DNA of 64,000 nucleotides from Guillardia theta CCMP2712 (GCF_000315625.1 NW_005434591.1:183895-247894); one strand, 5' to 3'. Positions 1,579-46,647 are shown, counted from the first letter of the stretch. Numbers and translations: made by a program. The notes: generated from the letters alone by a model not told the origin.

Positions 1579-2321
1579 CTTTTCCCTGCATGAAATTGGT
1601 TCAATCAAAAATACATGCAGCTCGGGCAGGGATCCAGAAAACAGGGCAAGGACAAAGTACTGCATCCATCAGGTTTCTCTCGATGAAAGGTTGGAGGGAG
1701 AAGCAATCAACAAACAAAAACAGGAACATGTGAAGTTTGGTGTCAATCAAGTAATGTCATTTGTGGGAGAACAAAACTGGTGTCGCAGGAGCCTACACGA
1801 AGTTTATAGGAACAACCCGAGTCATGCGCAGGAAAGGTAAAGAGACAAGAGATGCACAAAAGGAAAGACTGAAAGAATGTCTGATATGGAGGAGGGAGGA
1901 GGGGGAGGGGGGGAGGGGGGGAGGGAGCAAGGGAGCAAGGGAGCAAGGAGCGAGCAAGTTAGTGTCTTCTGAGCATTGTTCGTTTAGGCGTATAAAGCGG
2001 GGGCCCCACCCCATCTCGGGTGCCATGGGATCACGGATTACAGGGTAGGGTACTCACTCTACCCTGAGTAAATCCCTGTAAAAGGGGGTAGAGACACGTA
2101 CTACCCACCTCCCCGAGAGAAATTGTTACTAGAAAAGGGGGTGGGGGTGTTTCTGACACCACCCCAATTGTCTAGAGCAAGAGATTTCTGCCAGGCAGGG
2201 GTGGTCCTTTCAGTCCCTGGGGCGGGCCCGGATAACTACGAAGTTGTATGAGGGCGATGAGTTTAGGATATTTTTTTTGGATCGTCCCGCCAATTCAAGT
2301 TTGTGGCTTCGCAAATTCAGC

Positions 2322-5300
2322 ATGTGCGATACGGAAGGCGATGGCCAGCAATGGGCTGAGCAAGACCAAGGAGAAAGCATGGATGAAGGAGGAAAAACCG
2401 AACATGAAAGAGAATCCGAAGATGTGGATCAAATTCACATGTGCTTGTTCTTCGTTTCTTCCGTCCTTGGAGCAGCAGTGTTTGACGAAGCTCGTGGGGA
2501 ACTCAGCTTATTGCAAACGTTGGAGACAGAAGAATTTGAGTCGACCATAATCATGCTTGAGCAATGGAGACCATCGTCTGTTGTGATTTGTTCCAAGTTA
2601 TCGTCCGGATTGGAGGATGTGGTAAAATCATCTTGTTCAGGATGGTCATGCAACATAAAGATCGCTCCGCAAAGGTACGTCTTAAGGAAAAGTTGGTAAG
2701 GAACCAATGAACTCATCATGACAGGGATTTCAAATATGAATACGGAAAATCAAGACTTATTGCCCTATCTCTTGATGTCTACAAGTACTGTGTCTCCGAT
2801 AATGATAGGGAGTCGTGCTTGCGTACTGTTGTCGATCTCGATGCAGTGCAAGCTGTGTCATGTGCTGGTGCGCTGCTGATTCACTTGCATAACCACAAAG
2901 CGGTGGATGAATTGTGTTCAACTTGGCTAGCCCCTGTCTACTCTGCAAAAATGATGCAGCTCAAAGATTATCTACACGTTGACAAAGAGACCATGCATTC
3001 GCTGCAAATTCTTTGCAACGACATCCATCCTTCAATCATGATAAACGGCAGGGCCAAGGAAGGTTTATCACTATTGAACCTGATGGATAATACTAGATCA
3101 ATACTAGGAAGAAAATTACTTCGAACATGGATTCTGAGGCCGATTTTGAAGCAACAGGAGATCACAGGAAGGCAAAGTTCGCTCCGATTTTTTACTGGCC
3201 AGGAAAATCAAGAGCTGCTGATGGCTTTACAAGACCAGCTCAGATTTGTGAAGGATGTTCCAAGGTGAGAAAACTTCAATTTGCTAAGATAGATATGATT
3301 ATTTGAATGTCAGAATATTGATCCGAATGAGGAATTCTTCCGCCAGCTTGAGTGATTGGATAAATTTGACCACTTCCCTCAAAAGCCTGTCAACAATTCA
3401 CGAGATTTGCAGAAACGCTTTGAAATCATCAAAGCAGATGACATCTCCTATCATGGATCAAGTGCGTTAACATTGTGGTCGTTCGTCGAAGACATCGATC
3501 CTGATAAGTGCTATGAAAATGCAGATCCAAGCTCAATTCTGCACAGCACTTCCGAACATTCATGCCTTGATTTCAGAAGTGCGCATTCACGATTCTACGT
3601 TTTCTTCAACAGCATGATTCATAGCACCAGGTGATTGATTTCGAAGACAGTAGAGCTCGAAAGCGAATCTCAGTTGCAAGCGGAGTGGACGAGGAGCTCG
3701 ATCAGGACAAGCGCAACTACGACTCACTTGGACAATTCCTTGAAGACATTGCGCAGCAGGAGGTTTGAAACACAAATCATTTATGAAGTACTGTGAATTA
3801 ATCATTTGCAGGTTGACGATCTTCCTGATTCAATGGAAGGGTTGAAAATATCTGTCGTTTTCTTTCCTCAACTAGGCTACTTGGTAGATTTTTCCCCTAT
3901 TCTGGATCATGAAACCCCCTCAATGTGCTCTCAGGTTGCATCTCCAAACATTGCAAATGTTACAATTCCGGGGATGGAAATGCATTTTCAGACTGAAGAA
4001 TACGTCTACTGGAAATCTCAAAGAATGCGAGAGCTTGATGAAAATGTTGGTGATATTTGGGGGAAAATTTGTGACAGAGAGTTCGCCATAATTAATCGAG
4101 TATTCCCTGAATTTGCCCTTTTGTCACTCAGCTGAAAGTTGACATATACAGGTCCGAGAAAAATTACTGGAATTTGATGATGAGCTTGTTGATACATGTA
4201 AAGTTGCGGCAGCGCTTGACTGCATACTTGGATTTGCAATGATTGCTGTCGAGAGGAATTACTGCGAACCACGCATTGTACAAGAACCAGTGATCTACAT
4301 AGAAGATGGCAGGCATCCTTTGTGTGAACTTTGCACGGATGTTTTCATTCCAAACAACTCTATAATTCATGAGAATCAATTGGGATCACGCATACAAATG
4401 ATAAGTGGGCCAAACTACAGCGGAAAAAGTATATATTTAAAGCAGGTCGCATTGATATCTTTTATGGCACATATTGGCTGTTGGGTTCCAGCTAAATCAT
4501 GTCAGGCAAGTCTTTGAACAATTTTCAGTCCTGATCTGCAAATGACTTTCAACACATACGGCATTGACTCGTCTTGTGCGGTAGATTGGCCTCATTGATA
4601 GGATATTCTCACGAATACAAACCCGAGAGACCTGTGCTGTGGCAAGGTCTACATTTGCAATAGACTTGTCACAGGTATGAACAAAGTTTTGCATGGTGCT
4701 GCAAACGCTGCTTGACATCACTTTGAAAGATTGCTGTCATGATCAGATGCAGTACAACTCGGTCGCTCCTCCTTATAGATGAGTTTGGTAAGGGTACGAA
4801 TGCAACAGATGGAGTCGCAATTTTGGCTGCAACTATAAAGCAGCTTGATAGTCGCAAAGAACTTTGCCCGCGAACGGTAACAAATGAAAACAATTCAAAG
4901 ATTGCATGCCAGATTTACAATGTTGTGACTTTCATGGGCAGATAGTCACCACACACTTCAATGAAATGTTTGGGGATAAGGGAGTCCTTTCGTCATGCTC
5001 ACAAATATCCTACTGTACGATGGAGGTAATTCAAGTACTGAGCTTTCTTCTCCTTCACATATGAATACTCAGTGCATGCGTGAAGAAGTCATGAATGGAG
5101 ACAATCAGGATCTTACACAGATTCCCAAACTCGTTTTCTTATATAAATTGGTCCAGGTTGTTGTCACCTGCTTGATTTGAAACGTTTGAAATTTGGTTTC
5201 CAATCCAGGGATTGAGCATGGATAGTAATGGGTATCATTGCGCAATTCAAGCAGGAATTCCAGAGCTTATAGTTCAACGAGCAAAAGTGATTGCATCGAA

Positions 5301-41607: not shown

Positions 41608-41904
41608 AGCAAAGGATGCCGGGCCCGGCCTCGCAACCGGGACATCATCTTCGAGTCAAGTGACTACACCGGGCTTATCAATGAAACTTGGCAACTACAT
41701 AACGTCCGAGTCATAGCTATGTCAACAATGTTAGGCTCCAATGACAGCTCCTGTGAGGCATCGGCGGCGTGACAGCTCTTATGGCAGCTCCTACAGGACG
41801 ACGAGGCCTGTGCTATGCTGCTGTACGGTGTGCTATTAGTTTGAGGCTATCGGGGGATGAGGGCGATGAGGCTGGTGATGAAACGGGATGAGGGCCCTTG
41901 GCAT

Positions 41905-44214
41905 CACGGGGGTAGAACTACTATGTTCGAATTGACAGGCGGGCCAACCCCTGGTCGGTGAATTAAACAGTACAAATAATTAGTTAAATACCCCCCCCCC
42001 CCCCGCTTCGCCTCCATGCGGTCTGTGTGGGGCGCTATGGCAGTTTTTTCAGGGGGTTCTGCATGCCATGGCAGGGTATCACAACAAAATTCAAATCCGA
42101 TTTTTGGCGGGCAAACCTGTGACCCCCCTCGCCATGGGCAAGCCGAAGGTGCGGAAGACCGAAACATGCCAATCATGCCAAAAACCAAGAAAGAAGGCCA
42201 GTGTTCGAAGATGGCAAGGTGTGCCTGTTTGCACAACTTGTGTACATTTATTCAAAACCCAAAAGGATGAGTGTGGTTCTAAGCGGATTTTGCTCTCGAA
42301 GTGGGATGATACCTTGGTTTTCAAGCTGTTGGATTTCTTGCAATGTCAAGATCATGCAACTTTGTCTTTGGAGTGTGAAGACAACAATCTTCTCACTTCA
42401 GCGACCCAGCATCTGAAGTTAAGTCTTCGTTCTGTATCCTTGTTTGAAGTCCAAAAGAAGCTAAAAGTCCTTGGAGATGTTTACGGACATACATCAGAAG
42501 GGTTTGCGAAATGCTTTCTCTACTGTTACACCAAGGTTTTCGAAAAACAAGCATCTGGAAATCCACATGCAGGAACCACTGCTATGTATGAGCATTTAAA
42601 TCGACTTCGTACACAGCTTGGTAATATGCACAGAAAGCATCGAACTCTTTTTTCCCGAATCGAAAAGTGGTCTACCTCACATTTCGAAGATTTGAATTCA
42701 TTACAATCCACGATTCACGATTACTTTTTGCGGTAAGTCTGTGATGTTGCTTTCTTCCCCTCTCTGTAGTGTGATCATTCTGCAGATATGCAAAATTGTC
42801 GGATGAGCATGTTGATCCATGTCCCCCAAAGAAGCACACCAAGGCAGACTCCGAGCTGTTCATTCAGACAGTTTGTGAAACGTTCAGAACCCTTGATGGC
42901 AACACCCGATGTGAAATCATCCGAAGGATTCTGAGTGAGCACGACTCTCTGTGTCAAGCACAAAAGAAAACATCGGAGCATGAGTTCTCTGCGATATGCA
43001 ATGTCGAAAGAGCAGTTTCAAACTTACATGCTTGTGGATTGCCAGATGTAGTTTCTGAATTGGTGATGTTTGCCAGTAATGATATCGACGCTTTCAGAAC
43101 AACACACAAAATCATGCCGTACTTGGTAATGGATTGGTGTCGTCAAAGTTTTAGAGCGAAAGATTCGAGGGGCATGAGATTCTCCCCGGAGATTATCAGT
43201 TTCGCATCAACACTCAAAAACCTTGGCAATGCGACAATGTTGCGGTTCCTGTCAGGGCCAGGGAACAAGTTTACAGACAATTTCCATTCTGATCAGGCTT
43301 TACATAACTTGCCTCTGCCATGCATCTCTACTCTTTGCAAGCATCAAAGTGCTGACATGAAAACACGAGATGTGAAAAGGTCAAGAATATGTAGCGAAAT
43401 TTTGGACAATTACAGCGAAATGATGAGTACTAACCTTGTAGATGGTATCCACGTGTTGGCGATGGACAAGACGATGATCAATGCTGGTTTTTGTAAAGAA
43501 TTCGAAGATTGCGAAGCAGATTTAGGCGGTGTCACTGAAAGAAAGATGGATTTGACGGAACGGCTTGCACCGCGAAAGGAACGTTTGGCACAGCTTTGTC
43601 TGGAAGGGACGACAGTTGCATCGATTCAGGAACGAGTCATAGCCTTGTTGACCGACGACTTGGAGAAAATTAATGAAAGGAAAGCAACGGCTGAACGGGA
43701 TTACAAGAAAATTCGAGACAAGTATGTCGCAAAAATGACGAGCAACAATGCTGTGGCGAGGTCAGACACGAGAAGAAATTCCTCCAATGAAGTCAGATGA
43801 CGGGGAAGCTGAGAACAGCACACATAAGAACAAGCGAAGACGAATTTATGCTAAATCAGCACAATGGGATGGAGGCCTCAATGGTAACATGCCCGGGTTT
43901 CGGGGATTACGTGACATTGCTGGTTGCAAGTCGAAAAAGAGGTATACGAAAAGTAGAAAACATTAAAAAGAGCGATAGTGACATCCGAATCATTGGTATC
44001 ATGAGATAGAACTCACATTTCTCTGATAGACTGTGAGGTTTTGACAATTGTCATCATCGCGCTTTTTGCTTTAATCACCCTTAAACCTGGTCGCGGCCTG
44101 GCTGCCATTGCGATTTCCTGCAAACTTACCCACCCCCTCCCCATCAACATACCCTCTATCATTGAGGGAAAGACACCGGTCCTAGACCCTTTTATCGCGA
44201 GTTCCACCCCCGTG
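41905..44214 (+). mobile_element. Cut-and-paste DNA transposon, probably internally deleted; 15-bp TIRs and 9-bp TSD
   Basis: Left end CACGGGGGTAGAACT (41905-41919) and right end AGTTCCACCCCCGTG (44200-44214) are 14/15 inverted. CCTTGGCAT is duplicated at 41896-41904 and 44215-44223. The interior is more AT-rich than the neighbouring genes. Confidence 0.85.
42068..43800 (+). CDS. Truncated transposase-like protein (CxxC..CxxC finger + P-element-clan-like N-terminal core), 2 exons; intron 42733-42785
   Basis: A CG|GTAAG...TGCAG|A splice joins the 222-aa and 334-aa ORFs in frame. Motifs: CQSC..CTTC, GMRFSPEIISFASTL...LRFLSGP...LPLPCISTL, IHVLAMDKT. The gene lies between the TIRs. Confidence 0.6.
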
Positions 44215-44628
44215 CCTTGGCATCGGATGGGGGCCCGGGGGATGAGGGGCCACGAAGTGATGAAGTTGGAGGGGTACCGGTCCTATGCCACAAGGTAGTG
44301 TACCTGGGGTGGGGTACTAAGTTTGTAGCAGTCTCAATTGGGGTGGAGGGGTGGGTCAGGACTACTAATGTGTAATAGCCCAATGGGGGTAGGGTGGTAC
44401 TCTACAAAATGTTTCGAGAGGAGATCGGTAAAGGGGGTGCAAAGTAGGGGAATGTGGGGGGTAGGGTAGTGTGGGGGATCATTCTGGTAGGATCCCGTAT
44501 AAAAACGATTTATTGCGAACCCTGCCACCCTGCCACCCCTACCCCCATTTATACCAACAACTACCCCTATCTACCTGTGCTGAGATCCCAGGGGGTACCA
44601 CCCCCAGGCCGTTCAGTGGCTATCGGCC

Positions 44629-44732
44629 ATGCCGCGGCGGAGAGCAACAGTCTTCGGGAGGAGACGGAAAGCGAGGAAGAAGGAGGAGGTGATACCAGCA
44701 AGCGAGACTTCGACGCAAGACGAAACAGAACA

Positions 44733-44779
<47 letters not shown>

Positions 44780-46647
44780 GCACAAATGCGAGAAGCGTAT
44801 GCAGAAACAGTTCAAGCTCCGAAGATATGGCAGACAGTGACGATTTCAAAGAATCGAATCGGGCAGGAACAAAGAGGCAAACAATAACACAACCAAGAGC
44901 TCGAGGACGGAAGAAGATGACCGCAACAACAATAAACACGATAAAAACACCAAGAAACTTGCAGGAACACAACAATATCAACGAACTGAAACTGAGGTTG
45001 GAGGAGAGGGAACGGCAACTTGCCCTGCGGGAGGTTTATCTTTTAGAATGGGAACGAAGACTGTGCAGAAGAAAACATGAGCTGGATGCAAGATTAGGTG
45101 AGAAATCTTGTGATGCCTGGTCGACAGCTGAAGCTGTGTTTTCCCTGCTAGGTGCCTCAAACCCCTTTGTAAAATTCCTCCACGCCCTTCAGGTTGCGAA
45201 AGTCAAAGTCATTGACGGGCAGAAGATTCTTCTCCTCAAGACGTCAATCGGTGGGATACAAGCAGCAGGAAACACAATCATCATCAGAAATGCTTGGACG
45301 AATCTATTCCAACTTGCATTCCATGGCCTGACTATTCCCAATGCTCAAAACCACAAAGTTCTCTTTCTGGGTAAGTCTGGATGTGGCAACTCATGGTTTG
45401 CGTACTTCTGGATCTGGAAGCTGCTAGACATGGCACAAAAGATCTTGTACCATGTTCATGACTCTTTCTATCTGATCAACAGGGATTCGGTTGAGATGAT
45501 TCCCAGTTGTGATCTTCACTACCTGGATGCAGATGTTTGGTACTTGTCGGATCCAAAACCCGGGCAGCAGCCGTTTTCGCCATGCAGTTGGAAGACAATC
45601 TTCTTCGGCAGCCTTGGTGTAAGCCCCTACAACTCTTTCCGCAGAACGTACACGTTGACATACTACATCCCCTGCTGGACTTGGCCTGAGATCTACTTCC
45701 TTGGGATTCATTGCTCGACCCAGTCACCCGAGAAGATACAGACGATCACTTGTGACTGGGGCAACGTTCCTCGATGTTTCGTGTCCGATCCCAAAGACTC
45801 TCTCAAGTACGAATGCGCCAAAGTGAAATGTCTGTCTTCCATGCTCGAAGATGTCGTGTCAGGCAAAGTCACGGACGACACCTTCCCGTTCTCCTTGTTG
45901 CAACTTCAACCCTCGCAGGACTACGACAAGATGATCTTCAACTTTGCTTCTCCTCGAGTGCAGGACCTTGTCTTCTTGGAGATGATCAGATGGAACCGGA
46001 GGAGCCTCCAAGACTTCTTGATCAAGGAGCCTCGTCCCTCGTTTGCCCTCTTGCGGTTCCAGTTGTTCGAGACTCTGACGCATCACTGGCTCCGGGGAGC
46101 TGGGCAGTGCAGAGCCTTGAGCCTTGAGCCTCGCTGCTCCTCCAGCAGAGGCCGAGCGAGGAGCTCACCGGGTCCGCATCCTGATACAGCAGTGACGCTG
46201 CCTTTCCAGTTCCAGGGCTACTTGAAGGAGACGCGCTCGTTCCGGTATGTTCCCAAGGAGACGATCAGGTCTGGGAAGTACATCCAAACGGGGATCAAAA
46301 CTGGAGATTTCTTTGACTCGTTTGCGTTCTCCGACGGATGTATCTTCTTCTTCAGCATCCTGATGCAGCCGGCTGAGGCGCTTGACCGACAGCAGGTTCG
46401 GTCCCTTACCCTCCAAGTCACTCAGAAACTTGGAAGAGTTCCGATCCGATTCGTCTTCGTCCTCCCGACTTTTGTGCATGAGAGTGTGAATAGCGTGTTT
46501 GGGTTGGATGCAGATGCCCGATCAGATGGTAAGGGATCACAAGGTCCAGGAGGTGATGGTTCAGATGTTGAATGCGAGCAGTTTGTGACAGAAATCGACG
46601 TGATTTCAGAGATTGAAAGGTTAGATTATGTACATGTGAGAAATTAG
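44629..46647 (+). CDS. Crinkler/RHS-type P-loop NTPase + restriction-endonuclease-fold protein, apparently degenerate; intronless
   Basis: IIIRNAW..VLFLGKSGCGNSWFAYFWIWKL..WYLSD..KTIFFGS..YYIPCWTWPEI..WGNVPR..FASPRV..LFETLTHHWL..FFDSF..FVFVLP follows the Crinkler NTPase+REase motif order. Confidence 0.7.

What the first reader, a model, noticed from the sequence alone, without database searches (positions are those of the whole stretch)
41896..44223. DNA transposon with CACGGGGGT termini, a 9-bp TSD and a P-element-like transposase fragment: a combination not typical of the P superfamily
Seen: 15-bp TIRs (14/15 identical) and an exact 9-bp duplication CCTTGGCAT touching both ends. The insertion splits a run of GGGATGAGGG-like repeats that continues on both sides. 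Inside is a spliced ~560-aa gene with a CxxC/CxxC finger and GMRFS..F...L....LRFL.GP..LP..STL..VLAMD. Established: P elements start CA and make 7-8 bp TSDs, CACTA/Transib start CAC but make 2-5 bp TSDs, and 9-bp TSDs typify Mutator/Merlin. Inference: the protein resembles the start of a P/THAP9-clan DDE transposase, with the first catalytic Asp in LAMD. It stops ~400 bp before the right TIR, so this copy is probably a deletion derivative of a divergent, possibly unclassified family. The intact TSD suggests a fairly recent insertion.
Basis: partly seen in the sequence, partly recalled or inferred. Interest (0 to 1): 0.8.

Follow-up and report, generated by a model that had tools for sequence, protein, structure and literature searches.

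The report
Deleted P-like transposon copy in Guillardia
This is a real, recently inserted cut-and-paste jumping gene of the alga Guillardia theta. It is a copy that lost 1.7 kb of its enzyme gene, from a family whose enzyme is predicted to fold like the fruit-fly P-element transposase. It is therefore a divergent branch of a known kind of element, not a new kind.

Summary
Window 41905-44214 is a 2,310-bp element with 15-bp inverted ends (14/15) and an exact 9-bp duplication, CCTTGGCAT.

- **Host and parent.** The genome is Guillardia theta. The copy is an internal-deletion derivative, missing 1,726 bp, of a 4,036-bp full-length element on another contig.
- **Full-length gene.** It has two exons (222 + 965 codons). 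Three subfamilies, down to 54% protein identity, keep the same ends.
- **Target duplication.** It is 9 bp in 9 of 11 paired copies.
- **Protein searches.** Pfam and PDB sequence searches find nothing. A deep profile search finds remote eukaryotic relatives, a few of which touch Pfam's P/THAP9 RNase H model.
- **Structure.** A confident AlphaFold model of the core matches one chain above Z 8 among 48,161: Drosophila P-element transposase (Z 18.1). RAG1, Transib and Hermes score 6.3 or less.
- **Catalytic residues.** The conserved triad is D224, D456, E847. The window copy keeps only D224, so it cannot move itself.
- **Differences from P.** It has a CxxC-x17-CxxC finger instead of THAP, and a large helical insert between the first two strands of the core.
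- **Precedent.** A 9-bp duplication is already documented for the P element of Drosophila buzzatii and its MITE BuT5.

The scan had already found an intact copy of this family on another contig (s1-443917), with the same verdict. Verdict: new variant of a known kind; moderate interest.

The parts
41896..41904 (.). Left copy of the 9-bp target-site duplication, CCTTGGCAT
   Evidence: Read directly. It is identical to 44215-44223.
41905..41919 (+). Left terminal inverted repeat, CACGGGGGTAGAACT
   Evidence: Inverted repeat I2. The same 15-mer ends all three subfamilies.
41920..42067 (+). 5' subterminal region with blocks conserved between subfamilies (e.g. CGGGCCAACC, AGTTAAATACCCC) and two ATGGCAG motifs. 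Candidate transposase-binding sites.
   Evidence: Alignment of the 5' ends of subfamilies A, A' and B. The function is inferred.
42068..42732 (+). Exon 1 (221 codons + 2 bases). An N-terminal CxxC-x17-CxxC zinc finger at 42167-42241 is followed by a helical region.
   Evidence: ORF list. No Pfam family matches. The cysteine spacing was read directly.
42733..42785 (+). 53-bp intron, GTAAGT...CAG
   Evidence: Frame and consensus. A homologous intron is removed in transcript P0140 of the paralogue P0139.
42786..43800 (+). Truncated exon 2: helical DNA-binding-like region (GMRFS at 43171-43185), first catalytic Asp D224 (43465-43467) and most of the coiled-coil insert. It ends at a TGA (43798-43800) created by the deletion.
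   Evidence: 99% identical to residues 1-335 of the 965-aa exon 2 of the full-length copy.
43797..43799 (+). Junction of the 1,726-bp internal deletion (full-length positions 1894-3618 are missing), with 2-bp AT microhomology. The deletion removes D456 and E847.
   Evidence: BLASTN of the window copy against L031:501-4536.
43799..43966 (+). Remnant of the last ~55 codons of the transposase gene, now out of frame with the upstream part
   Evidence: ORF 43748-43966 matches the C-terminal tail of the full-length protein.
43967..44199 (+). 3' subterminal region. The block AATCGCAATGGC (on the reverse strand) is invariant in all three subfamilies.
   Evidence: Alignment of the 3' ends.
44200..44214 (-). 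Right terminal inverted repeat (CACGGGGGTGGAACT on the reverse strand)
44215..44223 (.). Right copy of the 9-bp target-site duplication, CCTTGGCAT
   Evidence: Read directly.

Best explanation
Window 41905-44214 is a non-autonomous, internally deleted copy of a 4,036-bp cut-and-paste DNA transposon family of Guillardia theta.

The full-length element encodes a two-exon transposase of about 1,185 aa. Its order is: a C4 zinc finger, a helical DNA-binding region, then an RNase H-fold DDE core (D224, D456, E847 in exon-2 numbering). An alpha-helical insertion domain lies before the catalytic Glu.

[quoted passage not shown] The family is therefore a very divergent lineage of, or next to, the P superfamily.

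Inferred mechanism: the enzyme binds the conserved 15-bp ends and subterminal blocks, excises the element, and joins it to target DNA at cuts staggered by 9 bp. Repair of the stagger gives the 9-bp duplication.

The window copy lost 1,726 bp, including D456 and E847. It keeps both ends, so it can move only with enzyme supplied by full-length copies such as the one at C86. Its 559-aa reading frame keeps only the DNA-binding half.
For: **Shown**
- Ends and duplication are present.
- The terminal pattern occurs 41 times in the genome against 1 for the control.
- The duplication is 9 bp and of unrelated sequence in 9 of 11 paired copies.
- The window copy equals full-length positions 1-1893 plus 3619-4036, at 99.8% identity.
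- An identical 3,314-bp deletion derivative sits at two loci with different duplications, so deleted copies are mobilised in trans.
- Exon 2 is intact in three subfamilies.
- dN/dS is 0.16 between subfamilies A and A'.
- The same ends are kept at 54% protein identity.

**Fold**
- The model of residues 395-890 has pLDDT 82 and pTM 0.85.
- Against 48,161 PDB representatives, 6p5a_A scores Z 18.1, with 262 residues aligned, rmsd 4.7, chain range 211-563. RAG1 scores 6.3, Transib 6.2 and Hermes 5.2.
- Foldseek ranks the P-element transposase first for both models. A second look at the full model gives Z 16.1, against 8.2 for RAG1.

**Sequence links**
- The profile search found 132 relatives.
- 9 of 46 touch PF21787 at E <= 1. 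One of them, P0017, passes Pfam's cut-off.
- The nearest language-model clusters are TNP-like/THAP9 families.

**Triad conservation**
- D224 is Asp in 5 of 5 remote relatives aligned there, and D456 in 29 of 29.
- E847 is Glu in 107 of 113.
Against: - The protein itself matches no Pfam P/THAP9 model, even at E <= 1.
- It matches no PDB sequence, either alone or as a profile.
- Foldseek E-values are weak (about 5e-3) and TM-scores are only 0.33-0.37.
- The first-strand region (residues 100-250) is modelled with low confidence. D224 therefore rests on conservation and secondary structure, not on a superposition.
- There is no THAP domain.
- Two copies show 8-bp and 7-bp duplications.
- Transposition itself, GTP dependence and the splice in this family are not shown experimentally.
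- Repbase and Dfam could not be consulted.
Confidence: 0.8

Rival explanations
1. The element is the same mobile element, but the family and its remote relatives (many with a YqaJ domain) form a separate, unnamed superfamily-level lineage. It would share only an ancient fold with P and would not be a member of the P superfamily.
For: - There is no direct Pfam hit.
- PF21788, PF21789 and PF12017 are never hit in 46 relatives.
- PF21787 hits always start at model position 63-65. This implies a large insert between the first two strands.
- The finger is not THAP.
- The TSD is 9 bp.
- TM-scores are only about 0.35.
Against: - Z 18.1 over chain 211-563 covers both the RNase H core and the insertion domain. 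It is about three times the score of any other transposase.
- One relative passes Pfam's curated cut-off for the P/THAP9 model.
- The Asp three residues before the catalytic Glu has the same spacing as D528 and E531 of the P enzyme (PMC7776569).
Confidence: 0.15
2. It is a Mutator-like (MULE) or Merlin-type element, as the 9-bp duplication alone would suggest.
For: A 9-bp TSD is typical of Mutator (general knowledge). No MULE transposase structure appeared in the fold searches, so fold comparison cannot exclude MULE.
Against: - No MULE, Transposase_mut, SWIM or IS1595 Pfam hit appears in the protein or in 46 relatives.
- The only transposase family hit among the relatives is the P/THAP9 RNase H model.
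- The ends are 15 bp, not the long TIRs usual in MULEs.
Confidence: 0.03
3. It is a Transib/RAG-like or hAT-like element, as the CAC ends might suggest.
For: The ends start with CAC. RAG1, Transib and Hermes do appear in the fold lists.
Against: Their Z-scores are 5.2-6.3, against 18.1 for P. Transib makes 5-bp duplications and hAT makes 8-bp ones (general knowledge). No hAT dimerisation domain or RAG1 Pfam hit was found.
Confidence: 0.02

Closest known systems
Drosophila P element and its transposase (PDB 6P5A/6PE2); P superfamily with 1360, Galileo and THAP9
   Same: - It is the best structural match, and the only strong one, covering the RNase H core plus the helical insertion domain.
- DDE triad.
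- An Asp three residues before the catalytic Glu.
- Short ends that start with CA.
- Many internally deleted non-autonomous copies.
- GC-rich target sites: 70% GC in 9 duplications, against 52% for the window.
   Different: - No THAP domain. A CxxC-x17-CxxC finger is present instead.
- A helical insert of about 165 aa lies between the first and second strands of the core.
- The spacings are much longer (D-232-D-391-E, against D-73-D-228-E).
- The duplication is mostly 9 bp rather than 8 bp.
- Pfam's models do not recognise it.
P element of Drosophila buzzatii and its MITE BuT5 (PMC3698922)
   Same: This is a member of the P superfamily that makes 9-bp duplications. Its MITE makes 8- or 9-bp ones.
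   Different: It is an ordinary insect P element with a THAP-type transposase and 3-bp TIRs. It has no detectable sequence relation to the Guillardia family.
Unnamed eukaryotic proteins that combine a YqaJ-like nuclease domain with this core (e.g. P0017 from the snail Batillaria attramentaria)
   Same: They share all three conserved blocks, with the same D, D and E, at E-values from 1e-28 to 1e-4.
   Different: They carry a YqaJ domain, and some a helix-hairpin-helix, where Guillardia has a coiled coil. Their ends and duplications are unknown. No open-access paper linking YqaJ with P/THAP9 was found.

Membership tests
P superfamily | RNase H-fold DDE core closest to P-element transposase | tested here: met
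   Z 18.1, 262 residues aligned, the only hit above Z 8 among 48,161 chains. The next transposases score 6.3 or less. The triad is conserved.
P superfamily | Sequence match to the Pfam P/THAP9 models (PF21787, PF21788, PF21789, PF12017, PF12596) | tested here: not met
   No hit at E <= 1 for either exon. There is only an indirect link: 9 of 46 relatives touch PF21787, and one is above the cut-off.
P superfamily | Alpha-helical insertion domain before the catalytic Glu that binds GTP | tested here: inconclusive
   The structural alignment spans chain 211-563, which includes the insertion domain. D844 lies three residues before E847, like D528 and E531. GTP binding cannot be tested here.
P superfamily | N-terminal THAP (C2CH) DNA-binding domain | tested here: not met
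   The finger is CxxC-x17-CxxC, and no THAP Pfam hit was found. THAP is reported to be restricted to animals (PMC7776569).
P superfamily | Target-site duplication of 7-8 bp (9 bp in the repleta-group P element) | tested here: met
   9 bp in 9 of 11 copies, 8 bp in one and 7 bp in one. This is within the documented range (PMC3698922).
Mutator/MULE | MULE-type transposase domain | tested here: not met
   No PF10551 or PF00872 hit in the protein or in 46 relatives.
Transib/RAG | 5-bp duplication and a RAG1-like core | tested here: not met
   The duplication is 9 bp. RAG1 and Transib score Z 6.2-6.3, against 18.1 for P.
Novosib, Kolobok and other superfamilies without a Pfam model or a solved structure | Similarity to their reference transposases in Repbase | not testable with these tools
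   Repbase and Dfam are not on hand. These superfamilies lack Pfam models (PMC5751038).

The most novel reading that the evidence does not exclude
The Guillardia elements and their widespread YqaJ-bearing relatives could be an undescribed, ancient branch of P-fold transposases. Its defining feature would be a large module inserted between the first two strands of the catalytic fold: a nuclease in animals and a coiled coil in the cryptophyte. Truncated products that keep only the DNA-binding half, such as the window's 559-aa frame and the single-copy expressed gene GUITHDRAFT_113240, could act as repressors, like the KP proteins of P elements.
Probability: 0.3. Interest if true: 0.6.

Novelty: new variant of a known kind. 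Interest (0 to 1): 0.45.

Why it matters
P-type transposases are the only ones known to need GTP, and they have been studied almost only in animals. This family offers a young, probably still active P-fold element in a cryptophyte alga, with intact and deleted copies, a different DNA-binding finger and a 9-bp stagger. It gives a natural comparison for what is essential in the P mechanism. It is also a candidate transposon tool for an alga with few genetic tools. In addition, it links a large set of unannotated eukaryotic proteins carrying a YqaJ domain to a known transposase fold. For genome annotation, gene models such as GUITHDRAFT_113559 and GUITHDRAFT_117952 are transposase fragments, not host genes.

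Tried and rejected
- **Pfam.** Scans of the window exon, both full-length exons and subfamily B exon 1 found nothing meaningful.
- **PDB sequence searches.** Searches with the protein, with a 46-sequence profile and with relative P0028 found nothing.
- **Word-based homologue search.** It found only Guillardia gene models.
- **Six-frame search of the genome with PF21787.** No hit, and none in the control genomes either, so this is uninformative.
- **Paralogous empty site.** Both flanks are unique in the genome. No second strain was available.
- **First model.** The 965-aa model had pLDDT 61 and a poor N-terminal half. I therefore re-modelled the core alone.
- **Block I relatives.** Pfam scans of relatives that carry block I did not link the GMRFS region to the P-element HTH model.
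- **Spliced protein.** The exons were handled separately, by reference.
- **Alternative superfamilies.** MULE, Merlin, hAT and Transib readings were considered and rejected, as set out under the rival explanations.

Full report
**1. Observation**

A 15-nt inverted repeat (14/15) has arms at 41905-41919 and 44200-44214. CCTTGGCAT touches both arms on the outside, at 41896-41904 and 44215-44223. GGGATGAGGG-type short repeats lie on both sides. There are 4 exact copies in the window, against 0.34 expected.

Inside the element are two open frames, 42068-42736 and 42796-43800. They join through a 53-bp GTAAGT...CAG intron (42733-42785) into 560 codons including the stop. The splice is inferred from frame and consensus. 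It is supported by a paralogue, in which a transcript removes an intron at the same R|Y position.

The exons were treated separately, by reference.

**2. It is a member of a repeated, mobile family**

The genome is Guillardia theta CCMP2712 (names; 87 Mb, 669 contigs). The element matches 54 places in the genome. The terminal pattern CACGGGGGNRGAACT occurs 41 times, against 1 for the reversed control.

The 11 copies with both ends have these flanking duplications:

| Copy | Duplication | Length |
|---|---|---|
| window | CCTTGGCAT | 9 bp |
| C172 | GGCAGGCGG | 9 bp |
| C20 | GCACTGGCC | 9 bp |
| C3 | CCGACCCCC | 9 bp |
| C7 | CGAATCCAA | 9 bp |
| C24 | GCCCAGCTC | 9 bp |
| C36 | CAGGACCCC | 9 bp |
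| C42 | CAGCACGAT | 9 bp |
| C80 | GGTCTGCTG | 9 bp |
| C69 | AGTGAAAG | 8 bp |
| C86 | ATGAGGG | 7 bp |

A 424-bp miniature copy on C11 has no duplication. The nine 9-bp sites are 70% GC, against 52% for the window. They have G or C at positions 1, 6 and 7 in all nine. With n = 9, this is only a hint of a target preference.

**3. The window copy is an internal-deletion derivative**

Against the 4,036-bp copy at C86:144056-148091 (L031:501-4536), the window element aligns in two pieces. The first is positions 1-1893, at 99.79% identity with one indel in a poly-C run. The second is positions 3619-4036, at 99.76% identity. The junction carries 2 bp of AT microhomology.

The deletion of 1,726 bp creates a TGA at 43798-43800. 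No other copy in the genome shares this junction. The deletion may therefore have arisen at this locus, for instance by interrupted gap repair (inference).

Other derivatives exist:
- An identical 3,314-bp copy at C172 and C20, with different duplications. This shows that a deleted copy was moved by enzyme supplied in trans.
- A 2,312-bp copy at C7.
- A 2,555-bp copy at C69.

**4. The full-length gene and its selection**

The full-length element has exon 1 (222 codons in the open frame) and exon 2 (965 codons). A second subfamily, A' (C3), is 81% identical in protein. A third, B, is 54% identical and has four intact copies at C24, C36, C42 and C80. Both have the same gene layout and the same 15-bp ends.

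Several subterminal blocks are invariant across all three subfamilies. Between A and A', exon 2 has dN 0.108 and dS 0.681, a ratio of 0.16. The enzyme has therefore been under purifying selection. An MMETSP transcript fragment shows expression.

**5. What the enzyme is**

Direct sequence searches fail. There is no Pfam family at E <= 1, no PDB sequence match, and the word search finds only Guillardia models.

A profile of the three subfamilies, searched against 1.84 billion representative proteins, found 132 proteins at E <= 1e-3. They share up to three blocks:
- block I, residues about 100-265;
- block II, residues about 405-495;
- block III, residues about 645-890.

Among 46 of these relatives:
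- 13 carry a YqaJ-like nuclease domain;
- 6 carry a helix-hairpin-helix;
- 9 touch PF21787, the N-terminal RNase H model of P/THAP9 transposases, at E <= 1.

The snail protein P0017 passes Pfam's cut-off for PF21787 (25.8 bits against 24.6). The language-model atlas places the protein next to TNP-like, THAP9 and P-transposase clusters. That result is a lead only.

**6. Fold**

Residues 650-880 were confident, and the helical stretch at about 250-395 was modelled with high to medium confidence. Residues 100-250 were poor. Even so, Foldseek ranked the P-element transposase first, with probability 1.00 and E 1.8e-3. The second-look aligner gave Z 16.1, against 8.2 for RAG1.

The second model, of residues 395-890, reached pLDDT 82 and pTM 0.85. 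It was aligned without a prefilter to 48,161 PDB representatives:

| Chain | Z |
|---|---|
| 6p5a_A (P-element transposase) | 18.1 (262 residues aligned, rmsd 4.7, chain 211-563) |
| RAG1 | 6.3 |
| Transib | 6.2 |
| BbRAGL | 6.0 |
| Hermes | 5.2 |

6p5a_A was the only chain above Z 8. Its aligned range covers both the split RNase H domain and the helical insertion domain of the P enzyme (domain map in PMC7776569). Foldseek's own numbers are weaker: E 4.9e-3 and TM 0.33-0.37. I read this as a shared architecture with large differences in detail.

**7. Catalytic residues**

In local profile alignments to relatives outside Guillardia, D224 (in LAMD) is Asp in 5 of 5. D456 (in WSFDGE) is Asp in 29 of 29, and is followed by Gly in 28 of 29. 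E847 (in DSVENLW) is Glu in 107 of 113 aligned sequences.

In the model, D224 follows strand 219-223, and D456 follows the helix-strand pair 430-445 and 450-454. This is the expected RNase H order.

Between them lie about 165 residues of long helices (253-394). In the relatives, the YqaJ domain occupies the same interval. In P0063, block I is at 137-282, YqaJ at 450-594 and block III at 1134-1308. Every PF21787 hit starts at model position 63-65. This is what an insertion after the first strand would produce.

A [C/D]-x-x-H motif (CINH in Guillardia, D..H in 88 of 109 relatives) and a very conserved stretch (Q723, D763, R772) lie in the insertion domain. D844 sits three residues before E847. 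In the P enzyme, the GTP-contacting D528 sits three residues before E531 (PMC7776569). This spacing is suggestive, not proof.

The window copy keeps D224 but lacks D456 and E847.

**8. Comparison with known families**

The element works like a P element:
- a DDE cut-and-paste enzyme with a P-type core;
- short ends that start with CA;
- GC-rich targets;
- a swarm of internally deleted copies.

It fails two membership features. It has no THAP domain; the finger is CxxC-x17-CxxC. It also has no direct match to the Pfam models.

THAP is reported only from animals (PMC7776569). P-like elements have been reported outside animals, in Trichomonas, Allomyces and rust fungi (cited in PMC3698922 and PMC5751038).

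The 9-bp duplication has a precedent. The D. buzzatii P element has a 9-bp TSD, and BuT5 has 8- or 9-bp ones (PMC3698922).

MULE, Merlin, hAT and Transib readings are not supported. Novosib and Kolobok could not be tested, because no profiles or structures for them are on hand.

**9. Novelty and verdict**

I found no open-access paper on such elements in Guillardia, nor one linking YqaJ with P/THAP9. Repbase and Dfam could not be checked.

The scan itself had already reported an intact copy of this family on another contig, with the same P-fold verdict (s1-443917). I reached the same verdict from my own searches.

I class it as a new variant of a known kind and rate it of moderate interest. 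The window copy itself is an ordinary non-autonomous derivative. The family and its YqaJ-bearing relatives are the interesting part.

Noticed in passing
window 41854-41894 and 44239-44248; L031:460-500 and 4537-4545: GGGATGAGGG is a dispersed, over-represented 10-mer: 1,565 genome hits against 337 for the reversed control, often in close pairs. Two of the 11 paired copies (the window copy and C86) sit inside such clusters. By a rough estimate, that should happen by chance about once in 10,000. It may be a target preference or a promoter-type motif. The window cluster lies about 400 bp upstream of ORF 44629-46647.
   Followed up: partly
G000:C65:297356-298984 (protein P0139, GUITHDRAFT_113240): This is a single-copy, expressed two-exon gene. 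It encodes only the N-terminal half of this kind of transposase (CxxC...CxxC finger, helical region, NMRYS...LPLPSPSTI block), at 31-35% identity. Its intron is at the same position, and it ends before the catalytic core. It is a candidate domesticated regulator or repressor.
   Followed up: partly
Proteins P0017, P0028, P0038, P0046, P0063 and others: Remote relatives from animals (e.g. the snail Batillaria) and from metagenomes carry a YqaJ-like nuclease domain between the block with the first catalytic Asp and the block with the second. This looks like a nuclease inserted inside an RNase H fold. No open-access paper linking YqaJ with P/THAP9 was found.
   Followed up: partly
G000:C172:35019-38332 and G000:C20:640212-643525: Two 3,314-bp copies carry the same 722-bp internal deletion and match the window element at 100% over the shared parts. 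Their 9-bp duplications differ. This is direct evidence that a deleted copy was mobilised recently.
   Followed up: yes
window 42036-42043, 42067-42074 and 44102-44108; L051 3' end: ATGGCAG occurs twice near the 5' end and once, inverted, near the 3' end. The 3' block AATCGCAATGGC is invariant in all three subfamilies. These are candidate binding sites for the zinc finger.
   Followed up: no
G000:C11:1091652-1092075: A 424-bp miniature copy has both ends, but no flanking duplication is recognisable.
   Followed up: no
window 44629-46647 (+): A 672-codon open frame starts about 400 bp downstream of the element. It has no Pfam family at E <= 0.01.
   Followed up: partly
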